A DNA stretch of 64,000 nt from Epiperipatus broadwayi (Eukaryota > Animalia > Onychophora), in assembly GCA_028023455.1 (NCBI GenBank), contig JAQFVV010000007.1:18228001-18292000 (forward strand), in the 5' to 3' direction. Of this stretch, positions 1,498 to 64,000 are shown piece after piece (within the stretch, counting starts at the first letter, position 1; the number at the start of each line of letters is the position of its first letter). The notes under the pieces are model-generated. The model did not search any database, was not told the origin of the DNA, and was given only the letters and a program-made list of their open reading frames with translations. Both the position numbers and the translations under genes were made by a program.

Positions 1498-2793
1498 TAT
1501 ATATATATATTGTATATGTAATTATTTTTTTAAAGTGTTGTTTTCTTTTTCTTCATTAATTTTGGGTATCGTGAATAAAAAAATATATATATATATATAT
1601 TTTTTTAAATGTATTTAAAGGTCGAATACAAGATTTATTAATAGTGGCAAATAACATGCACACAATGATGGATCTGGGTTAAGTGTAATGGTTTACTATC
1701 AACACAGGTGCAACCTGTATACTGTTATAAATGTTAAAACTACATACCATTATAAATGGAAATCCGTCATACATTATAAATAGTGCACCAACTTAGGTTC
1801 AAACTATTAACTGTTATAATGTATATAATTAAAGAAACTCTTATTCAAATTAAATGCACTAAAAAGTAAAAAATAAATTTTCTTCCATTTTCACAGTGTT
1901 TTTGATATTATGTAACTAAAAATAAGTCATGGGATGCTTATGTTTAGAAACTGTTTAACATATATTTACAAGTTATACGTAAGTTATCATTTCATGATTT
2001 ATTCTTCTTGAGGTTATTAAAAATAAGTACTTAGAGGTTTTGCTTTAAAAAGTAAACTAATATCAAATTTATTATCATGAATATTTAAATAGAATGACTT
2101 TTATTGTTTCAAGTCTGAATTTATCACACGACTCTAACATAATTCCAACATACACATTGCTGTTTGAGGAGCAAGCTTTAGTAAATAATAGATGTCAAAT
2201 AATAGAGCTTAATAAATTTCTAAACTAGTGTCTAGTTTATGGAATTTATCAGTGAGGAGCTTTGTAACTTGGAAAAAGGCATTTGGGCCTTTAGGATCTA
2301 ATGCACATTCTTTCTGGAAGCCATAATTTACTCCTCTGTGATGTTAAGCTAAGATGAAAAGCATATGAATGTTTTCAATCTAAGCCAACATACTCATATA
2401 GTCATATAGATTTGAAACTATTTAGTATTTACATATTATAGTGTTGTTAATCTTTTAGCAACTATGGACATCTATATCCTGTGGCTTGGATTAGTATGAA
2501 ACCAATGAAGTGTCACATGACACTATCACATGACTCCAGCATACACATTAATGTTTCAGTAGCATACATTTTTTTAACTATTAGTTACTAAAGCTTCCAT
2601 TAGATGGCATAGCAGAGTTGAAAGAAAAAATGATGTTAAACCACTAAACATCATATGACCACCATCCCTTATGCTAGCACATAACTGTTATTAAACAGGC
2701 AAAACTCTCCATACAGTAGTGTCAACCAGAGTAATCAATGGATGCCAGAGGGCTTGTGCATAAAATTCCCATCTAGTGCTTACTCATCCAATA

Positions 2794-2835
2794 TCCCCAG
2801 ACTAGTTTCTGGCCTGTGGCCTTCATCAGTGAGGA
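2794..2835 (-). ncRNA. Minimal type-I hammerhead ribozyme, family B (best copy)
   Basis: Minus strand: TCCTCA CTGATGA A GGCC ACA GGCC A GAAA CTAG TC/TGGGGA. Stem I TCCTCA:TGGGGA, stem II GGCC:GGCC, palindromic stem III ACTAGT, GUC triplet with predicted cut between 2800 and 2799. Confidence 0.8.
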
Positions 2836-3529
2836 GCCTTGGATCTGAGAGCACTACATCTAGATCTTAGGATCCAATGCAACCTTCCAGCAGCCACCTT
2901 TTATTTCTAATTAACTACAAAACTATGAGAATGAAATTGAAAATACACAAATGTTTTCAATCTAAGCTAAATAGCTTATATAGTCATATGGGTCTGAACT
3001 CAATTCGGCACCCATACATTTTGCTGTCTTTGGCTCTTTAACAACCATAGCCACCACTATCCTATTAGGCAGGATTGGTGTTAAACCATTAAACATCACA
3101 TGATCACCATCTCTTATGCTAGCACATAACTGTTATTAAACAGGCAAAACTCCATACAGTAGTGGCATCCATTGATTACTCTTGTTGGCACAGGGTGATA
3201 CTACTGTATGAAGAGTTTTACATATTTAATAACAGTTATGTGCTAGCATAAGAGATGTTGATCATGTGATGTTTAGTGGTTTAACATCAATCCTGCCTAA
3301 TAGGATAGTGGTGGCTATGGTTATTAAAGAACCAAAGACACCAAAATGTATGGGTGCTGAATTGAGTTCAGACCCATATGACTATATAAGCTATTGAGCT
3401 TAGATTTAAAATATTTGTATGTTTTCAATTTCATTCTCATAGTTTTGTAGTTAAGTAGAGATAACAGATGGCTGCTGGAGGGTTGCATTGGATTTTAAGA
3501 TCTAGGTGCAGTGCTCTCAGATCCAAGGT

Positions 3530-3571
3530 TCCTCACTGACAAAGACCACATGCCAGAAACTAGTCTGGGGA
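3530..3571 (+). ncRNA. Degenerate hammerhead, family B
   Basis: TCCTCA CTGACAA AGACCACATGCCA GAAA CTAGTC TGGGGA. The CUGAUGA box is mutated, so it is probably inactive. Confidence 0.6.
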
Positions 3572-5040
3572 TATCAGATGAGTAGGCACTAGATACGGAT
3601 TTTATGCACAAGCCTTCTGGCATCCATTGATTACTCTGATTAGCACAGGGTGGCACTACTGTATGGAGAGTTTTGCCTGTTTAAAAAATAATGTCTGAAT
3701 TTGTTTTTATATATACATATAAGATTTAGTAGGTAACCCAAGAGATATTTTTTTGGTGGCAAAAAAATAATTTGGCCATTAACACTTCTGAAATTTTACC
3801 ACGCTCTTTTTGTGAAGGGTATTTTGCATGATCTGGTATTTATTAAAACTACATTATCATATGTATAATATTTATAACCTTATAATCTATCACCAGGTTT
3901 TTGGAATATTACAAGTACATATATTGCTAATATTAAACCATAAATGCACATAAATAATTGGTTATCATATGTTAATCGCATAACCCCAGCCAATGCTAAA
4001 AATTACTCAATAGAATATCATCAATCTATTATCAGAGCAACACTCAGACAAAATTTTCATTTATTATTTCTGTGTTATCATGACAATAGATTACTGATAT
4101 TCTTCAGGTTAATTTTAAGTATTGGCTGGGTGGTTTAGAGAAGCATTAATGGTGAGAGAACTGGGTTGCATTGTAAGAACCTTGATCTCTAGAGCATACC
4201 TCTGCACTAATCCATTCAAGGAATTAAAAAATAAATGCAAACTCATATCAACAAATAGCAATTATTTTAATATTAATTATATACTACATCCAAGTAGAAG
4301 TACCTGTTACTATGTTGTTTCAACCTGCATTGGAGACAAAAACTTAACACATCTTGTAAATTCAGTTTATAGTAACTCATCTTTAATTCTTGATCTTATT
4401 TGTGTTATTGCATAATCAAGAAAAAATCTATTTCAATACTTTAAATATTAGAATTTTTTTCTTTTAACTAAAAAATAGTGTATCTGTTTGTCCACATTAG
4501 TAGGTGATGCCAGTTTAAAATTGACTTCTGGCCTTTATAGAAATGACATTCACTACCTTAGTATAATCTATTATCTACTTAATTTATCAGGCTGTTCAGT
4601 ACAACAATTATTATAATGATCATAAAGCCTACCTATCTTATTGCTAGTCATAGATCAATTTTACTACTAGCCAAAGAGGCAAATCTTAAATCAAGATCTT
4701 CTTTCTGAATATTCAATCAAGGAACTTTTCAATTCACTGAAAAATAATGGCATAAAAATATGTTTTGTGTGTGGCACCAACCAAATTTCATGTCCCATAT
4801 TCAATATTAAAATTAGCTGGATTAAATCTTTCTAAACATTATTGAAGCCTAGTAAGCAAATAGAGAAAGCACTCATGGTTACTATGATATAATAAATCAA
4901 AATATAAATTGAAACAAATGTTTTTAATGAAAGAATTGATTTTTAGATGATTAGCACTGTTTTTAATTAGCTTTAAATAAATTATTTAATTCATTAAAAT
5001 CAGTTGAATTCTGTGTTTATTTTTAAATATCACTTTTGTT

Positions 5041-6800: not shown

Positions 6801-7021
6801 ATCATCATCATCATTATCAACCATTATCAATCCACTGCAGGATGGTCTCTCCAAGTTCAATCCATGTTCTCTGATCTTTAATTTCTCTTCCCCATATCAC
6901 CTCTGCACCCTTTCTTATTTCATCCATCCATCTCACATGTGGTTTCTTTTTGGGTCTTTTACAATCTCTTAGAATCCGGTTTAAGATTTCAATTGTCCAT
7001 ATATTATCATCTCTTCTAGAG
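6801..7021 (-). mobile_element. RTE-clade LINE 3' end fragment
   Basis: Reverse complement carries the same 3' end as 34700-34900 and 47462-47660, ending ATCCTGCAGTGGATTGATAATGGTTGATAATGATGATG. Confidence 0.8.
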
Positions 7022-7544: not shown

Positions 7545-7960
7545 TTTTAACAGTTCTTACTTATGGACCTGAGACTTGGATATTCAACAGAATAGCAGTA
7601 CAGGGACTTCAGATCACTTGACAAACTATGGAGAGATGTATTAGTAGTAGTAAAAAGAGATGAAAATGAAATACATCGGTGGAAAAACAACAGGAGTTAC
7701 TGACATCATTGAAAGAATTAGGAAACTGAAATGGAATTGGGCTGAACTTATTGATAAAAAGAGAGGATAAGAACTGGACAGTTGAAGTTTAAATTGGATC
7801 TGAAGAAATTGTAGAAGAACTAAGAAAGATCAATATGTTAGATAGATGGATAAAATAAGAAAGTTCATTGGTGTGATATGGAAAGATGAATAATGCATAC
7901 AGAAACTGGATTAAACTTGGAAAAACTCATTGTGAAATGAATTGATAATTGTTGAAAATG
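7545..7960 (+). mobile_element. RTE-clade LINE RT C-terminal fragment (decayed)
   Basis: Frameshifted translation gives YGPETWIFNR...GVTDIIERIRKLKWNWA, typical of the RTE C-terminus. Confidence 0.8.
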
Positions 7961-33124: not shown

Positions 33125-34399
33125 CTTTAAACAGACATTGAATGACAAACCAGATGAAGTTTTCTATGAATGCATAAGTTAAAGAAATGATCTTTTATTT
33201 GAATGAAATTGCTAGTGTATCTTTAAGCACTTTTTCTAATTTGTTTTAAAATCGTAAACTGGGCACTGAAATCTTTTTTGACAGCTATAAGTGAGTTTTT
33301 TGTTTTATAAAAACATTTCAAATAATGAAATTTAAATTATCCTGAATGACTGTTGAATCACAAAAGTTATTTTACTGGTTACTTTGTATTAGTATATCTC
33401 AGAGGTAAAAATTGCTTCATCCACGTGGATCATCTAAATATTTAAACATTTTCCCCATTTGTTTTAAAGTCACACATATCACAACAGAAATGTTTTAAAC
33501 CAGTATGAATAATTTGATATGCATAGCATTTTTATTAGTGATTTTAAATTTGAAGCCCAGAAGCCAAAATTCTAAGAAGACCCTGACATATAGAGTAATT
33601 TGTTCTGCATTTTTTTTTACATTTTTTAATTCGGATAATGTTAGTTTAGAGATCAGTTGGTCAATTTTTTAAAGTGGATCCAGAGACAATAGTCTTCTTT
33701 GATTTGTTCATCAAACCCAATGATTTTAACGCCATAAGTTTTTTAATCAATTTTTTTGTTTACTGATGATATGAAAATATTATCTGCACTTCAGTGTCTC
33801 CTTAAAGCAATCTCTTGAGTGCTGATAAGTAAATAAGATAAGAACAGTATTAAACTAAATATAGTTTAGTTGAAAAAGATAAAATAGGTTAAATAGACTA
33901 AACTTATTTTTATACACTTCAATGTTTCAATAAAATTTGAATACTAATTCCTAAAAATTTTTTTTAAGGATATACAATATTTTGAGAAACCAAGTGATTA
34001 GTCAAAACAAAATAATGCTCACATTTTATATATATTAACAGGCAATAATTTATCTGACATCATTCTAACCATATACTTGAGTGTGAGTTGGCAAATGAAT
34101 AATACATAGGCTGACTACTAGCAGTGGACTTAGCATACAGATTGGATAGTGGTAAAGAAGTGGTGAACTATAAACTCAGTAATCTCTGGGTTGGCCATAT
34201 GTGCATTCACTGCTGAATCTGCTTCAGATAAAAAACTTAACTTGTATATCATTACTATGGCAATAGATGCCTGCTGCATTCAGTGGAAGTTAAAATGTGC
34301 TGAGTGTTTTCTAGCTGATATCATCACAGCTTCCTACATTAAACATATGGATGAAATTAATCATTAGAATTAAACTTAGTTGGAGTGTTTTTGGTAGAA

Positions 34400-34905
34400 A
34401 TAACCTAATACTAAAAAGAAATATGGCTATGTGTTTGAAATGGAAGGTTTTTTAATAAATGTGTTTTACCAGTTCTTATTTATGGGTCTGAGACTTAGAC
34501 ACTTAATAGTAGAGCAATACAGAGACTTCAGTTCACTCAAAGAAATATAAAGAGATGCATGTTAGGAATAACAAGAAGATATTGAAAATGCAATATATGA
34601 GTAAGAGAACAAACAGATATTACTGGCATCGTTGAAAAAATTAAAAGACTGAAATGGAGTTGGGCTGGACATATTGCCAGAATAGATGATTGTCAGAAGA
34701 GATGATAATAGATGGACAATTGAAATCTTAAACCGGATTCCAAGAGATAGTAAAAGACTCAGAAAGAGACCACATGTGAGATGGATGGATGAAATAAGGT
34801 GTGCAGGGATGATGTGGAGAAGAGATGCTAGAGATCGGAGAAGATGGTTTGTACTTAGAGAGACCTTCATCCTGCAAAGGATTGATAATGATGACATACA
34901 AAGAT
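34400..34905 (+). mobile_element. RTE-clade LINE 3' fragment
   Basis: LTYGSET...IIEKIKRLKWSWAGHIAR...RWTIEILNRIPRDSKRLRKRPHVRWMDEI, then the TTCATCCTGCA..GGATTGATAATGATG tail. Confidence 0.85.
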
Positions 34906-36420: not shown

Positions 36421-36659
36421 TTCAAGTTTGAGGTTTCTCTTAGATAATGAGCTTGTAGCCAACCAAATGAATGTTTGGATAATCTGAAAAGTAAAGAAGA
36501 AATGCCATGAAAATATTCTCAAAGAACATTTTTGTGTGAATGTGTTGAAAGAATTTTGCTGTTATTGAGCTGGCTAAAATTGTTACATCACCATTTACTG
36601 CTTTGTGTATAATGTGAACAGTATCATTTTCAAATATTATCTAGTTATCACACGATGAA

Positions 36660-37450
36660 GATCTTTTTTTTTTTAATACAGTTTCTCTGGTCCATAATTC
36701 TTTCTCTACAATCATTTAGCAAACTTTCTTATTTCATCCATCTCATATGTGACCTCTTTCTAATTAGTTACAGTTTTTTGGAATATAGTTTAACCATTCA
36801 ACTGTTCATCTGTTGTCATCATTTCTAGTAATGCATCTAGCTTACATTTATTTCATTTTTTAAAATTCTTTCAACGAAGTCAGCAAAATGTGTTTTTGCT
36901 CTCATCCTCATATTTTATTTTCATCCCTTGTTTCTCCTAATCTGAAATTATTGTAAGGCTCTTTTTTTAAGAGTCCAAGTCTCACATGAAACATTTTATG
37001 ATAACATCATCTATTATTATGTTTCCATCTGTATTAAAAATGTAAACAAGATATGTCTCCAATTGTTAACTTTTTAGAATTCAGGATTATCAATCTAATA
37101 ACATCAAATGCTACTTTGTTTTAGCATTTATCTTTAGACCTCTTTTCTTGCTTTTCCTCATGTAAAATTTTCAGAAGCTCTGAAACATTATTTGTAAAAT
37201 GATTACTTTACCTGCAAAATCTAAATGATTTATATAAGTTCCATATATTTTTATTCTATTAGCTTTCCTTTTTATTTCACATAATTTTTTGCAAAATTTC
37301 TGTAGTTTTAGAGATAGTAAATCACTCTGTCTCTTCCCCTCTCCATCACTGTTAATCTTGTTGTCACCATATAATCTAACCACTGCTATTGCTCTTTGAT
37401 AAATATTTTTTGGAATATGAAATATCTGTCTTATTGAATCAAAGTACTTT
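36660..37450 (-). mobile_element. RTE-like LINE fragment (decayed)
   Basis: Reverse complement gives RIKIYGTYINHLDFAGKVI (the F-A-D-D region) and the same 3' end as the other RTE copies. Confidence 0.7.
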
Positions 37451-37633: not shown

Positions 37634-37737
37634 CTACTAAACATCACATGATCACCATTCCCTAAAACTCTCTTGCCGACATTGCTTATTTATTCTGGCT
37701 TGCACCATGTGGCACTAGTATATGAAGAGTTTTACCT
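37634..37737. repeat. HHR-B fold-back remnant forming the 5' flank of the LINE insertion
   Basis: AAACATCACATGATCACCAT... and GGCACTAGTATATGAAGAGTTTTACCT match the palindrome centre at 3085-3225. Confidence 0.7.
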
Positions 37738-40700
37738 CTAGGAAGACAAGAATGGATGGTAGCTATAGTGTATATAGCTACTGGAGATAGTCAAACTATA
37801 ATGGAGTGGAACAGTAGCATATATGAATGCCTAGTTAAGGATATACAGAGTTTCAAAGAAAAGAGAAAGAGAATAATGGTTATAGGAGATATGAATGGGC
37901 ATATTGAAGAAATTGATGATGTAGGTGATAAGAATGGGCAACCTTTGAAGAATTTTTGTCAGAGTAAATTTGAGCATTGAAAATGTATCAAATATTTATG
38001 AGCAACAATACACATGATCTAGAAATAATATATTCCACACAATATATTATGTATTAGTAGAGAAAGAGGGAATGAATAAAGTACAGAAAATTAAGGGGTT
38101 TGATAATAAAGAGAGAGTATATAATAGTGATTATAACTTCTTTATAATAGAAATGGTTAGTAATGTGATGGAAAATAGAAATAAAAGTAGAAATGATAGT
38201 GAAAGATGTGGATGGAGGGTGAATGATAAGAATAAGTTAGAAGAGTATAAAATAAAAGTTGAAGAAACCATGGAAGAGTTGGTTGGGGATAAATATAAGG
38301 ACCGGTCTGGTGTAATAGAAAATGTGGCAAATATGGTTTTAGGTGAGAATATTCAGAAGAATAAAAGTAATAAAAAAGTGAGAGTTAGTAAAAGTGTAAA
38401 AGAGAGGAAAAAGCATGCAAAGAATATATGTGTGCTATTAAGAACAAAGAAAATGAAAAGGATGTTAATGTTAAATGAGAAAAGTACTTAGAAAAAAAGA
38501 AGTTGGCTAAGATAGATAATTAGAGAGAGAATGAAATTGAATAGTCAATTGTTGGAGGATATTAATAATAGTGGAAGAGATGAAAAAAATTTTTTGGAAA
38601 TACATTAAAAGAAGGAATGTATGAGAGAGAGAGAGAGAGATAGTATTACTAGATTATGATGGAGTAGAGAGTAGCTCTAGAGAAGAATTAGAGATGATAT
38701 TAAATAAGTATGTAATGGATATAGAAAAGATGTTAGATGTGAAGGACAGAGTGATAGCAAACATGAAAGCATGTAGTAATGGGAATATAGGTTTACAGAA
38801 ATTGAACTGAATGAGGCAGGGAATAAATTAAAAAGTGGAAAGGCAAGAGGTTTAGATGGATGAGCAGCAAAGATGGTAATGAATTCAGGGCATAGGGCAA
38901 AAGTAAAATTATTATTGTGTTTTAATCAACTAGCACAGAAAGAGAGTTTTTCCTGGTAGTTGGAGTAATACAAGAGTAAGGCTACTATTTAAAGGAAAGG
39001 ATCAGGATCATAGGAAGTTAAACAATTATGGACTGATAGCGGTAACATCAGTTTTATATAAAGTTTTTTTGATATGATGGCTGGAAGAGTTGCAAAATGG
39101 ATGGAATAGGAGATAGTTTATTTGTTGTTACACAACTTATGGATAGTTTATTTGTTGTTACACAACTTATGGATATGAGTAGGTATACAGGTAGATAGTT
39201 ATATATGGTTTTTATAGATATAGAAAAGGCATATGATAGAGTAAATAGAAATAGATTATGGATAAGTTTAATAAATTTGAGAATGGATGGAGCTTTAGTG
39301 GATATTATTAAGAAATTATATGAAAATAATTATTATATGTATTAATTAGTGAATATAGAATCAGTTAAAGTTAAAAATGGGTGGGACTAAGGTAAGGATA
39401 TCCTCTGTCACCTATTTTGTTTTGTTGTATTTGAGAGAAATAGAGACAGCAATAGAAAGATTAGGAAGAGGGATAGAGATACCATTAATAGGCAGCAAGG
39501 GACTATGTACATTATCTGGTCTTATTTGCAGATGATGTCTTTTTGTATGCAAAAAGAAGGGAAGATATGGAAGTTATGCTGAGGACATGCAGAAGAATAG
39601 GTAAAGAAATGGGGATTAAGTTTAGTGAAGAAAAATCAAAAGTAATGATGTTTAATTCTGGGGAAAGAGAAGACAGAGAATTTTTATTGGGGAATGTAAA
39701 GTTAAGTGCAGTGAATAGATATAACTATTTGGGAATCATCTTAATTAATCAGAAAAATTGGTTGGATACATGGGGAAAAAAAAGATAAATGAAGCAAAGA
39801 AAAGAAAGGGATTGATAAAGAAATTAACAGTGTTTTCATATAATAAATATGACGTAGCTAGAACTGTTTGGAAGGGAATGGTGGTAGCAGGGTTAATGAT
39901 ACATTATGTGCTAGTAAAGGGCTATTAGATTACTTGGAAAAAGTACAAAGAGAAGTAGGAAGACATGCACAGCAAAAGAGGCAATTCAAGGAAAAATGGG
40001 ATGGTCAAGTTTTTATATGAGGGATGTAAAAAGCAAAATGAAAATATTCGGTAGATTGCAGTTTATGAATAATAAAAGAATAGCCAAAATTGTATTTAAT
40101 TGGGTTATGAATAAAGGGCAGGTAATAAGATGGGTGAGGAAGGTAATGTGATATGCAGAAGATTTGGATAAAGAATACTTGTACAAAAGTATATTTGTAC
40201 AAAAGGTGGGATGATTGTGTTAGGAAAATTGTTCAGTGTTGTAGTGGTAAGGAATAGGATAGAAGAATAGATGCATTAATAAAGAATAGAGAGTTGGAGA
40301 GATAGAAAACTAGTATGGAGAGTAAAAGAGTTTATGGAATATTAGGTGCAAGTTAATTTATGATAATAGCAAGGAAAGTAGTTTACTGTTTAAGGCTCGA
40401 ACGGGATCTTTAGCAACAGGGGATTATACACGTAAGTGGAAAAACGTGGGTGATTTAGTCTGCAAGTTGTGTAAGGAAGGCATAGAAAATATTAGGCATT
40501 TGTTTATTAAATGTAAATGTTTGAAAGCAGAAAGGATTCAAATAATAAAGTTATGGAAGAATAAATATAAAGAAAGTGATTATACAGAAAGTGGGTTATT
40601 GATTTTTATGCTGGGTTTGGGGAAAAGGAGTTAGATATGAAGGCCATGGAGTTGACAAAGATTATGTTGTGGAAATGGAATTGAGCAGGATATGAGAAAA

Positions 40701-40810
40701 ACTTAGGGTGGAGAATGGAAAGGTAAGGTATAGTGGCTAACAGGTTTCTCTGGGCATTGTTGCTGAGAGATTCCTGACTCAGTATAAGGTGAAAGTGCAT
40801 CACATTACAT
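37738..40810 (+). mobile_element. 5'-truncated APE-RT non-LTR retrotransposon (clade uncertain, possibly RTE-X-like), decayed
   Basis: APE motif RIMVIGDMNGHI; RT motifs VRLLFKGK, FIDIEKAYDRVNR, G.PLSPILF and the (L)FADD region; C-terminal LFKARTGSL...CKLCKEGIENIRHLFIKC; ends in a CATCACATTACAT tail. Many stops and frameshifts. Confidence 0.88.
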
Positions 40811-41471
40811 CTGTTTATAAAGATTTTATTTAGAATTGTAATTTTTAATATATTTTTAAATATCTTTCTTAAATATCAATGCCAGTATGGCATTTTATCC
40901 AGTCATCTGATATTTCTTTATCAATTAGACATTTCATATATATATAGTTTTGCCAATAATTTTTGTATTTCTTCATCTACTTCTTTTAGCATATCAATAA
41001 TAATTCCATTATTTACTGGCGCTTTTTTCTTTCATTACTTTAACTGTATATCTCAGTTTTTAGATTTTTTTTTTTGGTATTTCCCAAAGTGTTGTAAATA
41101 TAAGAGTCACTGTCTTTTTATGTTCTTTATTACTATATAATTCTTTCTAGAATTCTTCCTCAATGTCATCCATTTTTTTAAATAACTTTTATATTTTCTT
41201 CTTATTGCTAAAACAATTTTCCTTCCAACACCAAATGTTCTTTATACTTTTGTTCTCTTCTATATATAATTTTTTATTCCAATTCATAGTTACATTTTCT
41301 ATATCATTATTAACCCGTTTTCAGATGTTTACCTTCAGATATCCAGTTATTTTTAATGTATCACTTAAAAATATTTTCATTTTTTTCTTCTTCATACATT
41401 ATTTTATTTCAGTTGAAGTTGAAACTTTCACCAAGTAATTTTATTTTCACCATTTTTTTTTTTTTTTTTAG

Positions 41472-44775: not shown

Positions 44776-46849
44776 TTAACATTATATGGATTTGACAATG
44801 CAATAAGAATGATAAAAGTTATAATTTATGGACATTCCAATAATTTTATTTAAAGTTATTCAATTAAATTATAAGTGTTAGGAATGCTTAGATAAGTACT
44901 TATAATTTAATTGCATTACAATTTGTCTAAGAAAAGTTAACAACATATATATTAAGTTATATACAACAAGAAAAATTGTGGTTGAAAAAAAAATAATTTT
45001 TTTGCTTTTTAGTACATTAGTTTTCAAATTAAATAAAAGCATTTTTCAAAAACTATCTTTTTTGTATACTATTTTTTAGTGCTTGGCTATATAAAATTGT
45101 TTAAAATTGGCTACAAGAATTTTACTTTTATGAAGGCATCAGTTTTAAAAAGCAATGTAACATAAACACTCTGAAGGGAAATTAAGATTTCATCCTTCAT
45201 TTCTTTTTTCCTTTTTTTTTTAATTAACTGTAAATACCTCTAATTTCACCCTCTAAAGTTAAACGAAAGCATCTGCTTAAATCTGATTTGAGTGTGATTT
45301 GAAATGTGGCCTACCAATATTATTAGTCTGGACAGCTTTAAAATTATTGCATAACAAAACCAACCATACAAAATTTGAAAAAAATTAGTGTGGCAGAAAT
45401 AAATAGGCATTTAAAAATAAATCCATTTTTGATTTTGAAAATCAAGAACTATCTTGACTTGAAAATCAAATTTTGTACAGTCTTTTTTGTCTTCTGTAAT
45501 TGAAAGATTTTAATTAAAATGAAATAATTGTATTGAAAATTAAAGATGATCAAAAGAATTTTTTTTGCTGCTTGGGTCATATTGTGTTATTTAATTAAAA
45601 AACAAACAAACATAAGTTTTGAATTTACATTTTGTTTAATAAAAATACTTATTGACAAATATTTAATAAATAATTCATAGACAGTATTGTGTTGCAGTGG
45701 GATGTAACTGCTTCTTGTATGAAGTTGTCAATAACAAGTATTAGCTACTGTTAACTTAATTTTTCTAAAACCACACAGTAGAAAATTTCTAATATTTGAA
45801 TATTTTAAGTCATCTGTAATGGCATAAAACAGTAATCACAACTACTTAATTTTCCATAATTATTTCTTAATGAAAAAAATTGAATTGTTATAAAATCAGA
45901 TCAAAATATTTTAGTTTTTGTAAATACCTGTTTTATGCTATCTGAATGCAATGAGATCTGATATAGTGAAGACTTCTAGAAAAAATAACTAATAGAATTA
46001 ATATTTTTTAAAATTATGATTTATACATCAAATGCAAAATTACATTACAAATACTAGAATGGCAAATATATTGGTCACCTAAAATAATTACCAATTTCAT
46101 TTATTTATGTATTTCTAGCAATAAAAAAAATCCAAAAGTCAGTAAAAAAAAGTTTTAAAACAATAAAATTGATAAAAATGGTATAAACTGAAATAATTTT
46201 GGCTATATATTATAAAATTAGAATTTGAAAGTTGATTTATATTTGATATTAAAATTCAAAACAATAACAGAAATCTAAAATTTAATTCTCTCAACTTTTA
46301 TTTTTAGGAGTAAAAATGTTATATGCATTTTTTTAAAAAAATATCTTACTTCTGTTATAATTTATATACCATAAAAACTCAAATTTGAAGCTGATTAATA
46401 GTGATATTAAAATAAAAAACTGAAATATAATAAAATTATAGTAATTAAACTCTAAAATGGAGTCACTAAATTGAAAAATTCAAGTGCATATATTGCATGA
46501 TAGTACCCTAATAGGTCATTTACTTTTATGAAGAAGGAGATGATTTTTTTATTTAGATTTATGAAATGCTTTTGATCAGATCAAACATTTTAAAATTTTC
46601 ATGAGATATTTTAATGCTAAAACTGGAAAACAAATGAAAGATGAAAAAGTTGTGAGTAAATTTGGATACTGAAACAATCAAGAGGAAATAGATCTGTGGA
46701 ATTTGTTGAAAAAGAAAAGCTATGAGGGGATATCCAAAAATAACTGGAATCATTCCCTGGAGAATGACCAGATTATAGTGCATGCTTCTGCTCCTAGATA
46801 GATATCTTTTGCAGGGATACTCCTTAACCAGTTTGGTAGATTGCAATTT

Positions 46850-47460
46850 ATGGATAGTAAGAGAATAGCCAAAATAGTATTTAATTGAATTATGAATAAA
46901 GGGCAGGCACAAGATGGGTGAGAAAAGTAATATAATATGCAGATTTGGATAAAGACTTTATGTTAGTAGACTTGTATCAAAGGTGGGGTGATTGTGTTAG
47001 GAAAATTGTTAAGTGTTATAATGGCAAAGAATGTGATAGACGAATAGATGCATTAATTAAATTTAGAAAGATAGAGAGTTGGAGAGCTAGTATGGAGAGT
47101 AAAAAGAATTTAAATATATATAGAAGTAAACAGAATAGTGGGTGTGAGTTAATTTATGATAATAGCAAGGAAAGTAATTTGATGTTTAAGACTTGAGCAG
47201 GATAGTTAGCAACAAAGGAATACACACACAAATAAGAAATGTAGGTGACTTACTCTCTAAGGAAGGGGTGGAAAATATTAGGTGTCTGTTAATTGAATGT
47301 AAAAGGGTACAAATAGTGGAAGTTGTGGAAGAATAAATATAAACAAAGTGATTATACAGAAAGTGGGTTCTTGGTTTTTATTTCTCAGTTTGGAAAAAGA
47401 TAAAGGCAGTCTAGATATAAAGGCCATAGAGTGGATGAAGATGATGTTGTGGAAATATAT
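46850..47460 (+). mobile_element. Fragment of the same APE-RT LINE family as 37738-40810
   Basis: Aligns to 40050-40680 (RIAKIVFN..., RIDALIK..., LIYDNSKESNLMFK). Its 3' end is cut off by an RTE insertion. Confidence 0.85.
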
Positions 47461-47461
47461 C

Positions 47462-48365
47462 ATCATCAACCATTATCAGTCCACTGCAGGATGAAGATCC
47501 TCCCAAGTTCAATCCATCTTCTCTGATCTTTAGTTTTTCTTCTTTACATCACCCCTGCACACTTTCTTATTTTATCCATCCATCTCACATGTGGGTTCTT
47601 TCTGGGTCTTTTACAATCTCGTAGAATCTAGTTTAAGATTTCAATTGTCCATCTATTATGATCTCTTCTATCAATATGTCCAATCCAACTCCACTTCAGT
47701 CTTTTAATTTTTTCATTGAGGTCAGTAACACCTCTTTGTTAACTTACCCATATATTGCATTTTCGATCTCTTGTTATTCCCAACATGTATCTCTCCATAC
47801 TTCCTTGAGTGGTTTGAAGTCTTTGTATTGCTCTTCTATTAAGTATCCAAGTCTCAAATCCATAAGTAAGAACTAGTAAAATACATTTATTAAAAACTTT
47901 CCTTTTCAAATACATAGGCACATTTCCTTTTAGTATCAAGTTATTTTTACCAAAAGCACTCCAACCAAGTTTAATTCTATGATTAATTTCATCCATTATG
48001 TTCCCATCTGTATTAATAATCTGATTAAGATATTTGTAGCTGTTAACTTCTTCTAACTCATCATAATCAATCTTTATTTTTATATTTTGAGAAAATCCAT
48101 TAAACATTACTTTAGTCTTTTTAACATTTATCTTTAGTCCTACTTTCATCTGATAACTCCTGCAACATTTCCTGCAGCTCTAAAGCATTGTTTGCAAAAA
48201 CAACTACATCATCTGCAAAATCTAAATGACTTAAATAATCTCTATTTACTTTCACTCCTTTAGCTTTCTATTTTAATCCTTAAAATACTTCTTGCAGTAC
48301 TGCTGTAAAAAGTTTTGGAGATATGGAGTCACCCTGTCTTATATACCCTTCTCAATGTTGACGTT
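47462..48365 (-). mobile_element. RTE-clade LINE, RT to 3' end
   Basis: GDSISPKLF, HLDFADDVV, GLKINVKKTKVM, LTYGFETW, with a (TGA)n tail at 47462. Confidence 0.9.
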
Positions 48366-51300: not shown

Positions 51301-52389
51301 TATGAAATTGACAATTTGAATCTAGATCAGGGCAATCTAGAAACCATAGGTCTTGATAAGCTAGATGAAACAGATTTCAGTGTTTACTTTGACCAAGATC
51401 GATACCTAGTGATCGATGATAAATATAAAGGTAGATGGGGGCAGAACAGATTTGAAGTATGGTTGTGACTTGTCATCACTTTGGATATAAAAGTTGAAGA
51501 TATTAAATGTGAGTTGCAGTGGAATTATCTAAGAATTTTAATCAAGGATAGAGTAATTATGGAAGGAACACTTCAGCATGCAATTTACCCTGAGATGACT
51601 AAGTGGTCTACTGCATCTCAGAGAAGGGCCTGAACAGTGGTAATTTCACTGATGCCAGCCATGGAACATGTATGGATTTTTTTATGGACTCTTACTGTTT
51701 GGACTTGCAAGTCTTTGGGAATTTTGGCCATTGGAATCCAAATTTGAGTTAGAAATAACTCGTTTCTTGAGTTCTTTAGTGTATTGTGATATGGGTCTAT
51801 GGTCAACAGTCAATCATTGAATGGATTTGGGTGACTGATGAAAATGACTCTTATTATTTTTTATCATTTGGTTGTAACATAGTGTGCTTACTAATATCAT
51901 AAGTATATCATTGTATATCATATCATGTGAGCATGTCGGTTTAAAAATGTATTCTGAGATAATGAACTTCTATAGTGTAAAATTACATTAAAATCAAAAT
52001 ATGCATTGTGAATCATAGATAAATTTAGTTTATCACTGTATGTAAACATGTAAATTCAAAGACTGATAAACCTTTTTGAAAAAAATAATAATAAGAAAGA
52101 CATGCTAATAGTTAAAGATTCCAAGTATTAATATTTTTTTTATCAGCCTTATTTTTATTTGAAAGCTTTCAAATCTGTTTCCAATTTAAATTTTACTTAT
52201 AAAAAGAATTTATAGTACAGTATACAGATTTTTTTTTTTAGAAAAATATAAAAATGTGATGATAAGAAAATTAACATTGATAAGGGTGTAGATAGGGTGA
52301 TTTCATATTAAATTTTTTTTACAACAGTTTTACTAGAAAATATTTTGTGAATTAAACTGAGAAGCTAAGGGAACGTATCATCTAGATTT

Positions 52390-52960
52390 TACAGTTTTTG
52401 CTATTATTTTTTACAAACAATACTTCAAAACTTGAGGAAATATTAGCCAAGAGCTATAAATGAAAGCAAGAAAGTAGGACTAAAGATAAGCACTAAAAAA
52501 CTAAAAGAATGTTCAATGACTTTTTATAAAAAGAAAAATAAAGGTTAATAGAAATTAATAAGTATAAATTCTTGGAATAGATTGATTATTAAAATAAATG
52601 CTTTTGATAGAAATAATTTAATATTAAAACGAAAATAGGTCTACGTATTTGAAAATAAGTTTTTTTTAAATAGATGTGTATAACTATTTTTTAATAGAAA
52701 TCTGAGAGCAAACAGTACAGTGGTTTCAGGTCACACGATGAAATATGGAAAAATGTATGTTACTAATAACAAGAAGGGATAAAAACTTAAATATGTACAT
52801 TAGAGTAAACAACTATTAATATTTATTAAGAGTATTATAAGGATAAAATGTTACTGGAAGAGATTATTATAGAAAACCATTAAAATTTTAAACCGAATCC
52901 TAATAGATTGAAGAACACTTACGTGGGATGTATGGATAAGGAAGTTATTTAAAGAAATAT
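52390..52960 (+). mobile_element. Highly decayed RTE-like fragment
   Basis: GAAAGCAAGAAAGTAGGACTAAAGATAAG matches the GLKIN region of the other RTE copies. Confidence 0.5.
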
Positions 52961-54485: not shown

Positions 54486-56029
54486 CTGCTACGGAAAAAA
54501 AAATGTCTAAAAAGTGCTGTAACCCCAAGAAATCATTGAAAACTCAGATCTGCGTATCGCGGCTTCTCTCAAATTAATACCGTCGTGTAAATGGAACTTG
54601 ATAATTTTAGACGCCGAAGGAGATTTGCAGTTTATCCAAATCTTGATCTGTTACAAGTTTATTATTTAGATTACAAAGAAAAGCTCTCTTCCAGATTTTG
54701 ATTAAGTTTTAAAATATTAAAAAAAAAAAAAAACTCCGGAAAAAAAAGTGTATAGTAAAAAATTCGCAGAAATAAGGGAGTTTTGGTTTAACCGATTAAA
54801 ATATATATGTAGAATTTATAAATACTTAATTTATAATATCCCCTGGTAAAAGTTATTACCTCACATTAAACTCATTTTTATACACATTGAAAAAATAATT
54901 GTAGACAATTTGTTTACATTTGTAGTAATATATACAGTATATAAATATTACAAACACTTAAAACTAAATATTTAAACAATTAATTCTGCGTCATTAGAGT
55001 AATTAAAATATTATCGCCATTATTATGTAATTTTTCAAATTCATCATCATTTTTAAAAATGCCAGAATTTCTGGAACTGTTAACTAATTCAAAGTTCGTT
55101 GAATTTCCTTATAGAGTATTTACATATACCGTATCTTGAACAGTCACGTGTAGCGGATAATACATTCACTCGTTAACCCGTTACTTGGAAATTGGAATTC
55201 AGATGGAATTTTGTAAAGTTATTTTTTTTTTTTAAATAGCTAAAAATTTCCAAGCAAGTGTCGGAGGATTTTTTTTCTTCCAGTTAACCGACTCCCAACT
55301 TATCCAATTATTGAACGTTAATATTCATACCTGACTCTTATTTTCGATTTTATTTCTTGGGGGGGGGGGGGATCCAAGTGAAAAGCTTGTATATATAATG
55401 TCTGAGTTTTATTTTTGTATAAACAATGACAGATTTAAATCTGCATATACTGAATAAAGATAAATATGTGTAGTTTTGATTGATAATTTTTTATAAATGA
55501 CATAAGTATTAAGAAATTTTTGGAAGGCAATTAAATAATCTTATAAATTTATTTTGTATTGCCATAATCATTAATGTATTTAAATAGAAGTCATTTTGTA
55601 TAAATTTTTATTTTTATAATTATGTATTTTTAAAGACTGCATTTAAATTTAACTGTATTTAAATTGTTTATTTTTAATTTTAAATAATGCACAGAACATG
55701 CCTACTTATGTTATGTATAGAGCTCGCAAACAAGCTCCTAACAAGCTTTGCAGAATATCCCCAACCCGAGATAAGCTTATTAAATTAGGTCATGTGACAT
55801 CTGACTTGATTTTTTTTTTTTTTTTTTGTAACATGCCTACTTGAATATGTTATTGCATATAGATTGTTTCTGCATTACTTTTCTGTTAATTGTCCAGGTC
55901 TCGGATCCATAAACTAGAAATGGTAAAACATTAAAAAAACTTTTTTTTTCCCAATCACATAAGGCATATTTACTTTTAATATTAAGTTATTATTATCAAA
56001 AATACTCCATCCAAATTTATTTGTATGAT

Positions 56030-56480
56030 TAATTTTATCCATTATGTTTCCATCTGTATTAATAATCTCATCATTAGTAAAATGTTAACTTCTAATTCAT
56101 CAATCTTTATTTTTTTTCTTTTTTTCTCATGTGTCATAGCATCAGCCAGGAAGCGAACCCGCTAATCCGGGACAGCTGTTTCTGCAGCTGTCGCTGACCT
56201 CTTGACCACCAATGCTTGACAGTCTTTATTTTTTTTTTTTACTTTATTCTTTTTATTATTTATCTTTAATTCTACCTTATTACTTTTATCAGATAACTCT
56301 TGCAACATTTCCTGAAGTATTATTTATAAAAACAATTACATCATCATTTTGCAAAATCTAGATGGCTTAAATAATTTGTCTCAATTTACTTTTATTCCTT
56401 CAACTTCCCATTTCAATCCACAAAATACTTCTTGGGGGAAAATGCTGTAAAAATTGTTGGAGATCTGAAATCACCATGTC
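56030..56480 (-). mobile_element. RTE fragment interrupted by a SINE
   Basis: Matches 47990-48330. Confidence 0.75.
56131..56222 (-). mobile_element. tRNA-Gly-derived SINE, second copy
   Basis: Minus strand GCATTGGTGGTCAAGAGG...GGGTTCGCTTCCTGGCTGATGC, flanked by the TSD-like TCTTTATTTTTTTT at 56104 and 56223. Confidence 0.7.
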
Positions 56481-60394: not shown

Positions 60395-60640
60395 TTAATT
60401 TTTCTCCTATAAATATGCATGTTGTGAGTAACAAGAAAAGATCAAAAACGTAATATCGGTAAACAGAACAAAGAGATATTACTGATCTCATTATAAAAAT
60501 TAAAAGACTGAAGTGGAGTTGGGCTGGACATATTGCTAGGAGAGGGAGATGATAATAGATGAGAAGTTAAAGATCGGAGATGGATTGAACTTGGAGGGAT
60601 CATCATTCAGTGGGTTGATAATGGTTGATGATGATGATTT
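60395..60640 (+). mobile_element. RTE 3' fragment with an internal deletion
   Basis: IKIKRLKWSWAGHIARRGDDN, then the ...CAGTGGGTTGATAATGGTTGATGATGATGA tail. Confidence 0.8.
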
Positions 60641-61649: not shown

Positions 61650-62310
61650 AAATGGACATTAAGATGAAAACTATGGGCATGTTTGAAAATATATATAGCA
61701 TTTCTTCTGTATAATTACTGCATAAGACCCATGTGGGTTTAAGATATAGCTTGAATCCATTAATGGAAAACATTTTAATTGGAATTTTAATCCCATCTGG
61801 TCATTTGTAATGCAGCAAAATTTCAAATCAAGTATCCACTTGATTTTAAAAGTCATCACTAGCATCAATAGTTAAAAATTACAGAAAACATGTGAACTGA
61901 ATAATTCTGATCTTCACTTTTTAAAATGTCTAGACAACTTTTCCAGATTTTTTATTGCAATTCTGCTATGTATATTATATTTTATCCAAACGTTTCAGAG
62001 CCATTTTAATATTGTGCAAACCAATATCTTTTATCAAAAGACAACTGTTATAAATTTCTGTATAAAAAGTAAATGCAGATATGTGTTATATATTAATCAG
62101 AGTAATATTAGAGTTAACAACAGTTGTTACTAATTATTAAGCAAAAGTACTTAATCATATTTGTAGAAAGACAATTAGTTAAAAAAAAACAGCTACCACA
62201 ACAATTAGAAAATCTTTTACTCGCACCATAGTTGTGCCACCAACTGTAAGTTTTACTAACCAATAAATGCCAGATAGTAATGTTTAATAAATTCCTCACC
62301 TGTGCCATCC
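61650..62310 (-). mobile_element. LTR-retrotransposon integrase remnant
   Basis: YSWWHNY...FSNCCGSC resembles the N-terminal zinc domain and CITNDQMGLKFQ resembles the I-x-x-DQG-x-x-F core. Heavily decayed. Confidence 0.45.
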
Positions 62311-62384
62311 TATCTAATGTCTCTAGACTAATTTCTAGTTATAGCTTTAATTAGCACTGGTTAAAAATTTATTAAAGTCTGGAG

Positions 62385-62973
62385 ATAATGCATGAGTAGG
62401 CACTAGATAGGGATTTTATGCACAAATCATCTTGCATCCACTGATTACTATGGCTTGCACTGGATGTCACTACTAAATGGAAAGTTTTTCACTAACAGGT
62501 TTCTCTGGGCATAGTGGCCGAGAGATTTCTGACTTCAATACAAGGAGAAGCCACAATACATCACATCATTGTTTTAACAACTTGTTTAAGCATAGAAAAT
62601 GGTGATTATGTGCTATTTAGAGGATTAATATTTCTGTCCATGGAATGATGATGACTAAGGTTATTAAAGAACCAAAGACAACAAAATGTAGATACTGAAT
62701 TGGGTTCAGATCAATATGACTTTACAAGTGAATGAGCTTGGATTGAAAACATGGTTTTTTTTTTGACTCATTTTAACTAAAAATGTGGCTACTGGAGAGT
62801 TGTATTAGATCCTAAAATCTAAGTGCTATGCTCTCACATCCAAGGCTCCTCACTAATGAAAGCTACAAGCTAGAAATTATTCAGGAGTTTTTGAAGAGTA
62901 TGCACTACATAGGGATTTTATGCACAAACCTTCTATGGCTGGCACTGGATGGCAGTATTGTATGCAGAATTTG
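62385..62973 (+). repeat. Tandem HHR-B monomers; degenerate hammerhead at about 62847-62886
   Basis: GATAGGGATTTTATGCACAA recurs at about 62407 and 62908. Motif TCCTCA CTAATGA AAGCTACAAGCTA GAAA TTATTC AGGAG. Confidence 0.8.
62490..62568 (+). mobile_element. About 80-bp 3'-terminal piece of the APE-RT LINE inserted in an HHR-B monomer
   Basis: CTAACAGGTTTCTCTGGGCAT...ACATCACATCA matches 40737-40810, with HHR-B sequence continuing on both sides. Confidence 0.8.
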
Positions 62974-62978
62974 TTTTT

Positions 62979-64000
62979 GATAAATGAAGCAAAGAAAAGA
63001 AAGGGACTGATAAAAAAATTAATAGTGTTTCATATAAAAATATGATGTAGCTAGAATTATATGGTAGCGGCAGTAGCAGGGTTAACATATGGTAAAGATA
63101 CATTATGTGTTAGTAAAGGAAGGTTAGATTACTTAGAAAAAGTACAAAAAGAAGTAAAAAGACATGCATTAGATGCAGATGTAAGGACAACAAAGGATGC
63201 AATTCAAGGAGAGATGGGATGCCAAATTTTTATATGAGATGCAAAATGAAAATGTTCAGTAGATTGCAATTTATGGATAATAAGAGAATAGCCAAAACAG
63301 TATCTAATTGGGTTATGAATAAAGGGCAGGCAACAAGATGGATGAGAAAGGTAGTATGGTATGCAAAAGATTTGGATAAAAAAATTTTGTCAGTATACTT
63401 ATACAAAAGGTGGAATGATTGTGTTAGGAGAATTGTTGGGGATTGTAGTGGCAAGGAATGTAATAGAAAAATAGATGCATTAATAAAAAATAGGGAGGTG
63501 GAGAGATGGAGAACTAGTATGGAAAGTAAAAATAGTTTAACTATACTGTATATAGAATTAAACAGAATATTGGTGCAAGTTAATTTATGATAATAGCAAT
63601 GAAAGTAGTTTACTGTTTAAGGCTCTATCAGGATCTTTAGTAACAAGGGAATATACACATAAATGTAAAAATATGGGTGATATTTAGTCTGCAAGTTATG
63701 TAGGGAAGGCATAGAAAATATTAGGCATATGTTAATTGAATGTAAATGCCTGAAAGCAGAAAGGGTACAGATAATGAAGTTGTGGAAGAATAAATATGAA
63801 CAAAGTGATTATACAGAAAGTGAGTTCTTGGTTTTTATATTGGGTTTTGGAAAAGATAAGGGTGATTTAGATATAAAGGCCATAAAATTGACAAAGATTG
63901 TTATGGAAATGGGATGGAGCAGGGTAGAGAAGAATATGGGAAAAACTTTAGAATGGGGAATGGAAAGGGAAGGTAAGGTGGCTAACAGATTTCTCTGGGC
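62979..64000 (+). mobile_element. 5'-truncated copy of the APE-RT LINE, running off the window end
   Basis: Aligns to 39785-40755, including the C-terminal CKLC...H...C region. Confidence 0.9.

What the first reader, a model, noticed from the sequence alone, without database searches (positions are those of the whole stretch)
37634..40820. A LINE family that appears to target one site in a hammerhead-ribozyme repeat (insertion 1 of 3)
Seen: the uninterrupted HHR-B consensus is CACTACTGTATGGAGAGTTTTGCC|TGTTTAATAACAG (minus-strand read of about 2680-2725; also 3200-3245 and 3652-3685). The 3.07-kb LINE starts right after ...ATATGAAGAGTTTTACCT (37737) and its CATCACATTACAT tail is followed by CTGTTTATAA. 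The same junction recurs at 62490 and about 62973, with three different 5' truncation lengths (about 3.1 kb, 80 bp and 1.1 kb). Established: most target-specific APE LINEs are in the R1 and Tx1 clades and some Tx1 elements target other transposons. Inference: this LINE does not look like R1 or Tx1 and may use a dispersed, retrozyme-like repeat as a safe-harbour target, a parasite-on-parasite arrangement I do not recall being described. A fourth fragment (46850-47460) has no HHR-B flank, so targeting may be a preference rather than absolute.
Basis: partly seen in the sequence, partly recalled or inferred. Interest (0 to 1): 0.88.

Follow-up and report, generated by a model that had tools for sequence, protein, structure and literature searches.

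The report
LINE landing at one ribozyme-repeat site
A decayed jumping gene of the LINE type sits three times, cut to three different lengths, at the same nucleotide of a 445-bp hammerhead-ribozyme repeat, which most likely means it homes to that site in another mobile element; such homing is known, only the target is new.

Summary
A 3,073-bp LINE (37738-40810, with AP-endonuclease, reverse-transcriptase and zinc-knuckle remnants) is 5'-truncated inside its endonuclease. It follows ...GAGTTTTACCT of the 445-bp repeat "HHR-B" and is followed by CTGTTTATAA.

The same repeat position, U445|U1, carries a 78-bp LINE tail (62492-62569) with both repeat halves intact. One unit later it carries a copy of at least 1.02 kb (62979-64000+). 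All three have the same orientation. Seven other U445|U1 sites in the window are empty. A second LINE family in the window has six unrelated 3' flanks and none in HHR-B.

The two loci share no flanking homology. LINE copies differ by about 20% and their repeat flanks by 23-35%. One duplicated insertion is therefore unlikely.

Best reading (about 0.55): a site-specific or strongly site-preferring AP-endonuclease LINE.

LINEs that target other transposons are already described (Tx1L, Tx1-Mar). This is a new member of a known kind with a new type of target.

The genome-wide flank test could not be done. Contigs from public runs show both families are very abundant but do not resolve the junction. 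Unchecked notes on other windows of this genome report the same pattern (s1-174394, s1-172191).

The parts
37634..37737 (+). Short HHR-B fold-back fragment upstream of LINE copy 1. The reverse-oriented piece 37634-37665 matches about U63->U33. The forward piece, about 37680-37737, matches about U388-U445 and ends ...GAGTTTTACCT.
37738..40810 (+). LINE copy 1, 3,073 bp, decayed with many stops and frameshifts. It is 5'-truncated inside the AP endonuclease, starting at about residue 117 of the relative P0163. RT lies at about 38.8-39.9 kb, the zinc knuckle at 40326-40631 and the 3' UTR at about 40635-40810, ending CATCACATTACAT.
40811..40820 (+). CTGTTTATAA, matching HHR-B positions U445-U10 with one indel. 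Unrelated DNA follows. U10 is also a natural end of HHR-B arms at 3687 and at about 43.
62257..62491 (+). HHR-B fold-back at the start of the second locus. The reverse arm is 62257-62354 (U411->U314). The forward arm is 62376-62491 (U340-U445).
62492..62569 (+). LINE insertion 2: a 78-bp 3' tail (LINE positions about 3000-3073), 80-82% identical to copy 1.
62570..62978 (+). One complete HHR-B unit (U1 to about U445), 71% identical to the unit at 2698-3142, with its hammerhead-like motif at 62845-62893.
62979..64000 (+). LINE insertion 3: LINE positions 2047-3018, 79% identical to copy 1. It runs off the window, so the 3' junction is not visible.
46832..47456 (+). LINE fragment 4 (positions 2310-2939). 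Its 5' flank is not HHR-B. Its 3' part is replaced by the 3' end of another LINE family.
2631..3687 (.). Reference HHR-B locus: a palindromic (head-to-head) pair of arms, each longer than one 445-bp unit. It holds four empty U445|U1 sites and two hammerhead-like motifs (2837-2789 on the minus strand, 3528-3576 on the plus strand).

Best explanation
The element is an AP-endonuclease LINE whose integration is aimed at one position of the HHR-B repeat. That position lies between ...GAGTTTTGCC (U445) and TGTTTAATAACAG (U1).

Inferred mechanism, not shown. The endonuclease nicks the bottom strand at 5'-...TTATTAAACA|GGCAAAAC-3'. The freed 3'-OH primes reverse transcription at the 3' end of the LINE RNA. 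Priming may be helped by pairing with read-through target sequence, as in R1 and R2. Synthesis often stops early, which gives 5'-truncated copies of any length that all abut U445. At most 1-2 bp of target is duplicated.

HHR-B itself is a non-coding 445-bp unit with one minimal type-I hammerhead-like motif. It occurs in tandem and head-to-head arrangements and has two alternative 3' ends (about U10 and about U57-72). This is the footprint of Penelope-like or retrozyme-type elements.

Because HHR-B is very abundant, it offers many harmless landing sites, and the LINE itself has become very abundant.
For: Shown:
- Three LINE pieces start at LINE positions 1, about 3000 and 2047 directly after U445 (+/-3 nt), all in the sense orientation of HHR-B.
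- Both visible 3' ends are followed by U1 onward. At insertion 2 the repeat continues for a whole unit. At insertion 1 it continues for 10 nt, a match expected at only about 5e-4 per position.
- Insertion 2 splits the unit cleanly, with no loss of target.
- Three of ten sites in the window are occupied.
- A second LINE family in the same window serves as a control: six 3' ends, six unrelated flanks, none in HHR-B.

Independence of the events:
- The two loci share no homology outside HHR-B.
- LINE copies are 75-82% identical to each other.
- Their repeat flanks are about 65-77% identical to one another and to the reference unit.

Nature of the element:
- RVT_1 at E=8e-10, zf-RVT at 31 bits (above its cut-off), and a weak endonuclease hit.
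- The endonuclease remnant aligns to residues 117-186 of the 1,096-aa relative P0163.

Precedent: target-specific APE LINEs, including ones that target other transposons, are established (PMC4640811; PMC4494074).

Unchecked AI notes on other windows of this genome report the same kind of junction (s1-174394, s1-172191).
Against: - Only two independent loci and three junctions were seen. The genome-wide tabulation of flanks was not possible.
- Contigs of public runs show both families at very high copy number. Most LINE contigs lose alignment at 62534, before the junction, and only the top rows of the tables are returned.
- One of four LINE 5' ends (46832) is not in HHR-B.
- The site lies only 10 nt from a recurrent natural end of HHR-B arms (U10, three cases). 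One arm also ends at U441 (window 1-24). This zone may therefore be special for reasons that have nothing to do with the LINE endonuclease.
- The three occupied units share GGCT where the five empty sites in the alignment (A, D, E, F, G) have GGTT, AGTT or GATT, and the read-derived consensus has GGTT. This is a weak hint of a LINE-associated subfamily.
- No intact endonuclease is available, and no nicking was tested.
Confidence: 0.55

Rival explanations
1. Mosaic cDNAs made by template switching. During one retrotransposition event the reverse transcriptase (the LINE's own or a Penelope-like one) jumps between LINE RNA and HHR-B RNA. LINE 3' fragments of variable length are thereby built in between HHR-B units or capped with an HHR-B piece, in the way U6-L1 chimeras form. 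This would mean the LINE machinery handles retrozyme RNA.
For: - Arrays alternate HHR-B, LINE, HHR-B, LINE within one locus that begins with a fold-back.
- The junction lies in the zone where HHR-B arms naturally end, U441-U10.
- A T-run (U439-442) precedes the junction.
- The occupied units share one diagnostic base.
- An unchecked note from another window describes one short stem-loop module at three different LINE truncation points (s1-172191).
- Template switching by LINE RTs is established (PMC4494074).
- Which element mobilises animal retrozymes is an open question; LINEs and PLEs are both named as candidates (PMC7229834).
Against: - A jump lands on the 3' end of the acceptor RNA. The HHR-B ends seen here are U10 and U57-72, and the predicted ribozyme cut is after U342. 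None of these is U445.
- In insertions 1 and 2 the HHR-B part runs 2-4 nt past the T-run, so a Pol III-type terminus does not fit.
- Both visible LINE 3' ends are followed by U1 onward, which a simple chimera inserted at a random site does not predict.
- No significant target duplication flanks the composite at copy 1.
- Fold-backs next to the site occur at empty sites as well: B, C and E.
Confidence: 0.2
2. The site is a structural or compositional hot spot (a fragile, nick-prone end of the HHR-B unit). This LINE uses it opportunistically, without sequence recognition by its endonuclease. Recognition could come, for example, from pairing of a LINE RNA 3' terminus that itself ends in TGTTTAATAA.
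For: - The zone U441-U10 is a recurrent breakpoint in HHR-B copies that carry no LINE.
- LINE copy 1 and two HHR-B arms all end in TGTTTA(A/T)(A)AA next to unrelated DNA.
- The last 20 nt or so of the LINE tail resemble the antisense of HHR-B U42-U63, 18 of 22.
Against: - The second LINE family in the window does not use the site.
- The insertions have a fixed orientation and a junction precise to +/-3 nt.
Confidence: 0.12
3. Descent from one ancestral HHR-B::LINE composite. The composite would have spread by segmental duplication, array expansion or SINE-like amplification, followed by deletions.
For: - Insertions 2 and 3 lie in one array.
- The occupied units share GGCT.
- SINEs made of a target-derived head plus a LINE tail are known (PMC4494074).
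Against: - Three different LINE start points would each need a deletion ending exactly at U445.
- The loci share no homology outside HHR-B.
- The flanks of copy 1 and copy 2 are only about 65% identical.
- LINE copies are about 20% diverged from each other.
Confidence: 0.08

Closest known systems
Tx1-clade target-specific LINEs that land in other transposons (Tx1L in Tx1D; Tx1-Mar in Mariner-N4; Tx1-8_Crp and Tx1-4_AMi in LTR elements). Source: PMC4494074.
   Same: An AP-endonuclease LINE inserts in one orientation at one position of a dispersed, multicopy mobile element. 5'-truncated copies are frequent. ORF2 has a C-terminal zinc knuckle, and the RT motifs are L1/Tx1-like.
   Different: The target is a non-coding, hammerhead-bearing, Penelope-style retroelement, not a DNA transposon or LTR element. 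Membership of the Tx1 clade was not shown. The nearest relatives are unnamed proteins of about 1,100 aa, many from ticks, at 30-45% identity. Copy number here appears very high.
R1 and R2 elements in rDNA arrays
   Same: Repeated units of a tandem array are each interrupted at the same nucleotide by variably 5'-truncated copies. Expression by co-transcription with the target is possible. R2 frees its 5' end with a ribozyme.
   Different: R2 has a restriction-like endonuclease and carries its own HDV-like ribozyme. R1-type RT motifs are not seen. The solved TRAS1 and R1Bm endonucleases are not matched by the relative P0163. The target here is a selfish repeat, not a host gene.
U6-L1 and other template-switch chimeric retrocopies
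   Same: A small abundant RNA is joined at one fixed end to L1 pieces truncated at many different points.
   Different: In those chimeras the 3' flank is random and the whole unit has target-site duplications. Here the 3' flank continues the same repeat from the next nucleotide.
Animal non-LTR retrozymes and Penelope-like elements carrying minimal type-I hammerheads (PMC7229834, PMC8557442)
   Same: This comparison applies to HHR-B, the target. It is a tandem unit of about 445 bp with low GC and one type-I hammerhead-like motif per unit, whose helix III is reduced to a palindrome. It shows head-to-head fold-backs, partial tandems and an optional terminal extension.
   Different: No Rfam hammerhead model is matched. 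Positions 10.1/11.1 are an A-A mismatch. Neither circular RNA nor self-cleavage was tested.

Membership tests
APE-type non-LTR retrotransposon (LINE) | Reverse transcriptase of the non-LTR type | tested here: met
   RVT_1 at E=8.3e-10 on 39492-39785. Relatives align across 38.8-39.9 kb.
APE-type non-LTR retrotransposon (LINE) | N-terminal apurinic/apyrimidinic-like endonuclease | tested here: met
   37741-37962 aligns to endonuclease residues 117-186 of P0163 (34% identity, E=4e-8). The Pfam hit to Exo_endo_phos_2 is weak (E=0.02). The domain is truncated and decayed.
APE-type non-LTR retrotransposon (LINE) | Variable 5' truncation with a common 3' end and no terminal repeats | tested here: met
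   Four copies start at LINE positions 1, 2047, 2310 and about 3000. Two show the same tail.
Target-specific LINE | Most copies genome-wide flanked by the same target sequence on both sides | tested here: inconclusive
   In the window, 3 of 4 5' junctions and 2 of 2 visible 3' junctions are at U445|U1. Genome-wide, the contig data did not resolve the junction. Scans of other collections found no copies.
Target-specific LINE | Fixed orientation relative to the target | tested here: met
   All three insertions are in the sense orientation of the HHR strand.
Target-specific LINE | Endonuclease nicks the target sequence specifically | not testable with these tools
   This needs recombinant protein from an intact copy. 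No intact endonuclease is present in the window.
Tx1 clade | RT groups with Tx1 reference elements in a phylogeny | tested here: inconclusive
   No labelled reference set was available. zf-RVT and QGCPLSP-type motifs fit the L1/Tx1 group. Distant named relatives are L1-type. Foldseek scores TX1, L1, R1 and jockey alike.
R1 clade | RT and endonuclease group with R1, TRAS or SART | tested here: inconclusive
   R1DM is nominally the top Foldseek hit but is tied with jockey at 16-17% identity. The solved TRAS1 and R1Bm endonucleases are not matched at E<=1. From my own knowledge, the RT motifs are not of the PQGS type.
Hammerhead retrozyme / Penelope-like derivative (the target, HHR-B) | Hammerhead core with helices I and II and a GUH cleavage site | tested here: met
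   UCCUCA-CUGAUGA-(A)GGCC ACA GGCC(A)-GAAAC-UA-GUC-UGGGGA is present in four copies and in the read consensus. Helix II shows a compensatory change between copy A (G-C) and the consensus (A-U). The MFE fold gives helices I and II.
Hammerhead retrozyme / Penelope-like derivative (the target, HHR-B) | Recognised by curated hammerhead covariance models | tested here: not met
   No Rfam match at the gathering score or at E<=10.
Hammerhead retrozyme / Penelope-like derivative (the target, HHR-B) | Tandem or inverted partial copies with an optional terminal extension | tested here: met
   The locus 2631-3687 is a head-to-head pair of arms, each longer than one unit. Arms end at about U10 or about U57-72. 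This matches the description in PMC8557442.
Hammerhead retrozyme / Penelope-like derivative (the target, HHR-B) | Self-cleavage and circular RNA | not tested

The most novel reading that the evidence does not exclude
The LINE is an obligate lodger of a ribozyme-bearing retroelement and uses its host's ribozyme. It always sits in the sense orientation, 103 nt downstream of the predicted hammerhead cut (after U342). Transcripts of HHR-B arrays would therefore carry the LINE and could be trimmed by the repeat's own hammerhead into a defined LINE RNA. This would be the job that R2 does with its built-in HDV-like ribozyme, here outsourced to the target.

A related reading is also not excluded. The junctions could record the LINE's reverse transcriptase working on retrozyme RNA. 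That would name a LINE as a mobiliser of animal retrozymes, which is an open question (PMC7229834).
Probability: 0.12. Interest if true: 0.85.

Novelty: new member of a known kind. Interest (0 to 1): 0.55.

Why it matters
Site-specific LINEs show how a selfish element can multiply without harming its host, and they are studied as natural tools for targeted insertion.

Almost all known targets are host multicopy genes, microsatellites or telomeres. A few are DNA or LTR transposons. A LINE that homes to a hyper-abundant hammerhead retroelement would add a new class of target.

It would also explain how a site-specific LINE can reach very high copy number. It would place a LINE next to a self-cleaving ribozyme that it does not encode.

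The physical linkage also bears on the unanswered question of which autonomous elements interact with animal retrozymes.

Tried and rejected
- **Rfam.** Scans at the gathering score and at E<=10 found no hammerhead. The only notable hit (MIR4387-like, 3091-3277, below its cut-off) is the HHR-B palindrome itself.
- **Protein pieces.** The C-terminal 102-aa piece found no homologue in the word-indexed protein search. An exhaustive HMMER search with the 98-aa RT piece found nothing closer than 43% identity, so no intact copy of this family could be fetched with its flanks.
- **Collection scans.** A metagenome scan for the LINE-tail 18-mer gave 25 loci. All were chance matches of at most 24 nt in GC-rich or bacterial contigs. 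Scans of viral contigs and of bacterial/archaeal genome contigs for LINE-tail and HHR-B patterns found nothing.
- **Laying contigs.** Contigs of four public runs were laid on 62300-64000. Both families proved hugely abundant and gave consensus snippets. However, contigs are about 200 nt, most lose alignment at 62534, and only the top rows are returned. The share of LINE 3' ends that continue into HHR-B could not be read.
- **Clade.** PDB sequence search, cluster names, the protein atlas and Foldseek against Swiss-Prot did not resolve it.
- **Target-site duplication at copy 1.** The best match, TATAAAAAT/TATAAAGAT, is reached by 14% of random pairs of window segments, so it was rejected.
- **Second ribozyme or RNA end at U445|U1.** None was found.
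- **Missing tail of fragment 4.** A search elsewhere in the window did not find it.
- **Earlier findings by sequence.** The look-up was blank.
Full report
**What is there**

The window is AT-rich (29.7% GC). At 37738-40810 lies a decayed non-LTR retrotransposon. The pieces between stop codons give RVT_1 (E=8e-10), a zf-RVT zinc knuckle (31 bits, above its cut-off; CX2CX8HX4C) and a weak endonuclease signal. The first 225 nt align to residues 117-186 of the AP endonuclease of the best full-length relative, P0163 (1,096 aa). Copy 1 is therefore itself 5'-truncated inside the endonuclease.

blastn of this copy against the window finds three more pieces:
- 62492-62569: LINE positions about 3000-3073, 80-82% identity.
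- 62979-64000: LINE positions 2047-3018, 79% identity, running off the window.
- 46832-47456: LINE positions 2310-2939, 76% identity.

**The repeat (HHR-B)**

The reference locus 2631-3687 is a head-to-head pair of arms, each longer than one unit. The unit is 445 nt. I number it U1 (TGTTTAATAACAG...) to U445 (...GAGTTTTGCC).

Each unit has one hammerhead-like motif at U311-348: UCCUCA-CUGAUGA-(A)GGCC ACA GGCC(A)-GAAAC-UA-GUC-UGGGGA. Helix III is reduced to the palindrome ACUAGU. This is the minimal type-I form described for Penelope-like elements and, as dimers, for some animal retrozymes (PMC7229834; PMC8557442).

The consensus of thousands of contigs from public runs keeps the core and shows a compensatory change in helix II. 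No Rfam hammerhead model is matched, even at E<=10, so ribozyme activity is inferred, not shown. The predicted cut is after U342.

HHR-B arms end at two places:
- About U57-72, at 2631, about 340, 42765 and 37634.
- About U10, at 3687, 40820 and about 43.

Together with the fold-backs and partial tandems, this matches the published footprint of Penelope-type insertion with an optional terminal extension. A follow-up on another window of this genome reached the same reading for a sister family (s1-182657).

**The junctions**

- Copy 1 follows ...GAGTTTTACCT and is followed by CTGTTTATAA, then unrelated DNA.
- Insertion 2 follows ...AAGTTTTTCA(C) and is followed by TGTTTTAACAAC... The repeat then runs on for a complete unit.
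- At the next U445, insertion 3 begins.

All three are in the sense orientation of the hammerhead strand. Seven other U445|U1 sites in the window are uninterrupted. Ten sites of +/-3 nt in one orientation cover about 5e-4 of the window. The 10-nt match after copy 1 also has a per-position frequency of about 5e-4. The coincidence is not chance.

Fragment 4 is not informative at its 3' side. It is cut by the 3' end of a different LINE family with a (TGA)n-type tail. Its 5' flank is not HHR-B.

**Control and independence**

The second LINE family has at least six copies in the window whose 3' ends can be read. Their flanks are all different and none is in HHR-B. HHR-B is therefore not a general sink for LINE insertions.

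The sequences around the two occupied loci have no homology outside HHR-B. LINE copies differ by about 20%. The repeat flanks of copies 1 and 2 are only about 65% identical.

One ancestral composite spread by duplication would also need three deletions that all end at U445. I consider that unlikely (0.08).

A weak contrary hint remains. The three occupied units share GGCT where the five empty sites aligned (A, D, E, F, G) have GGTT, AGTT or GATT, and the read-derived consensus has GGTT.

**Mechanism**

The simplest account is target-primed reverse transcription at a specific nick between U445 and U1, with frequent 5' truncation. This is how R1, R2 and Tx1-type elements behave. These steps are inferred.

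The main rival is co-synthesis by template switching between LINE RNA and HHR-B RNA. Several points speak for it:
- The mosaic array at 62257-64000.
- The position of the site in the zone where HHR-B arms end.
- An unchecked note from another window about one stem-loop module at three LINE truncation points (s1-172191).

Several points speak against it:
- No HHR-B RNA end is expected at U445. The ends seen are U10 and U57-72, and the ribozyme cut is after U342.
- The junction lies 2-4 nt past the T-run.
- Both visible LINE 3' ends continue with U1.
- Fold-backs beside the site are equally present at empty sites.
- No significant target duplication flanks the composite at copy 1.

A third possibility is a structural hot spot, or pairing of a LINE RNA that itself ends in TGTTTAATAA. 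It cannot be excluded. LINE copy 1 and two LINE-free HHR-B arms all end in TGTTTA(A/T)(A)AA next to unrelated DNA.

**Clade**

No close relative exists in the protein libraries; the best match is 43% identical over 98 aa. Full-length relatives are unnamed proteins of about 1,100 aa with endonuclease, RT and a zinc knuckle, many of them from ticks.

Their alignment gives the motifs GLKQGCPLSP, YADD and CxxC...H....C. From my own knowledge these are L1/Tx1/RTE-type, not R1/I/Jockey/CR1-type. More distant named hits are plant and vertebrate L1-type proteins.

A confident model of P0163 (pLDDT 86.5) matches R1DM, jockey, TX1 and L1 ORF2 about equally. The PDB sequence search finds R2 and L1 ORF2p but not the R1-clade endonucleases. 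The clade is unresolved, and an L1/Tx1-group position is the most likely.

**Genome-wide test**

It could not be completed.
- The metagenome, viral and prokaryote-genome collections hold no copy.
- The single read-laying run used contigs of four runs, three from one sample of organism A and one from organism B. More than 100,000 contig pieces per large run match the 1.7-kb stretch, so both families are very abundant.
- That call also gave LINE and HHR-B consensus snippets. However, most LINE contigs lose alignment at 62534 because copy 2's tail is diverged, and only the best-supported rows are returned.
- No top-listed loose end lies at the 3' junction. This is no evidence either way.

Other first-stage notes on this genome describe 'a LINE joined repeatedly to one site inside the ribozyme repeat' (s1-174394) and related patterns (s1-172191, s1-177582). 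They are unchecked and I could not read those windows.

**Comparison and novelty**

Target-specific AP-endonuclease LINEs are concentrated in the R1 and Tx1 clades (PMC4640811). Tx1-clade families that land in other transposons are described: Tx1L in the piggyBac element Tx1D, Tx1-Mar in Mariner-N4, and Tx1-8_Crp and Tx1-4_AMi in LTR elements (PMC4494074). The parasite-on-parasite arrangement is therefore known.

What is new here is the target, a hammerhead-bearing, Penelope-style non-coding retroelement. My literature searches found no report of a LINE targeting such repeats.

The geometry invites a testable idea: sense orientation, 103 nt downstream of the predicted ribozyme cut. The repeat's hammerhead could trim co-transcripts into LINE RNA. 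I give that about 0.12.

**Verdict**

It is a probable new member of the known class of target-specific LINEs. The decisive genome-wide and biochemical tests are still to be done.

Noticed in passing
window 47457-48342 (-); also 34342-34904, 7355-7964, 6808-7018, 55871-56487, 60415-60637, 36621-37332, 52260-52693: A second, unrelated LINE family whose 3' end reads ...GGTTGATGATGAT(GA), a (TGA)n-type tail. It has at least seven copies in the window with heterogeneous 3' flanks. One copy truncates LINE fragment 4.
   Followed up: partly
   Followed up: no
window 3687, 40820, about 43 versus 2631, about 340, 42765, 37634: HHR-B arms have two alternative 3' ends, about U10 and about U57-72. The shorter end is only 10 nt past the LINE site. 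At 1-60 two arms meet tail to tail (U441 and U10) with an 11-nt filler.
   Followed up: partly
window 62550-62569 versus 3261-3282: The last 20 nt or so of the LINE tail (CCACAATACATCACATCAT) resemble the antisense of HHR-B U42-U63 at 18 of 22 positions. It is unclear whether this is chance or a shared origin. Another window's note speaks of a hammerhead unit built from an antisense LINE tail.
   Followed up: partly
window 39112-39171: A perfect 30-bp tandem duplication (GATAGTTTATTTGTTGTTACACAACTTATG, twice) lies inside the RT region of LINE copy 1. A (GA)n run lies at about 38625-38640.
   Followed up: no
window 3091-3277: An Rfam MIR4387-like hit (56 bits, below the gathering score of 84). 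It is simply the long hairpin formed by the head-to-head HHR-B arms, not a microRNA gene.
   Followed up: yes
L008-L011, L018, L019, L023, L025 (metagenome contigs): Eight marine metagenome contigs of about 40% GC share an identical 21-mer with the LINE tail (LINE positions 2998-3018) and nothing else. This is probably a conserved bacterial sequence that matches by chance.
   Followed up: partly
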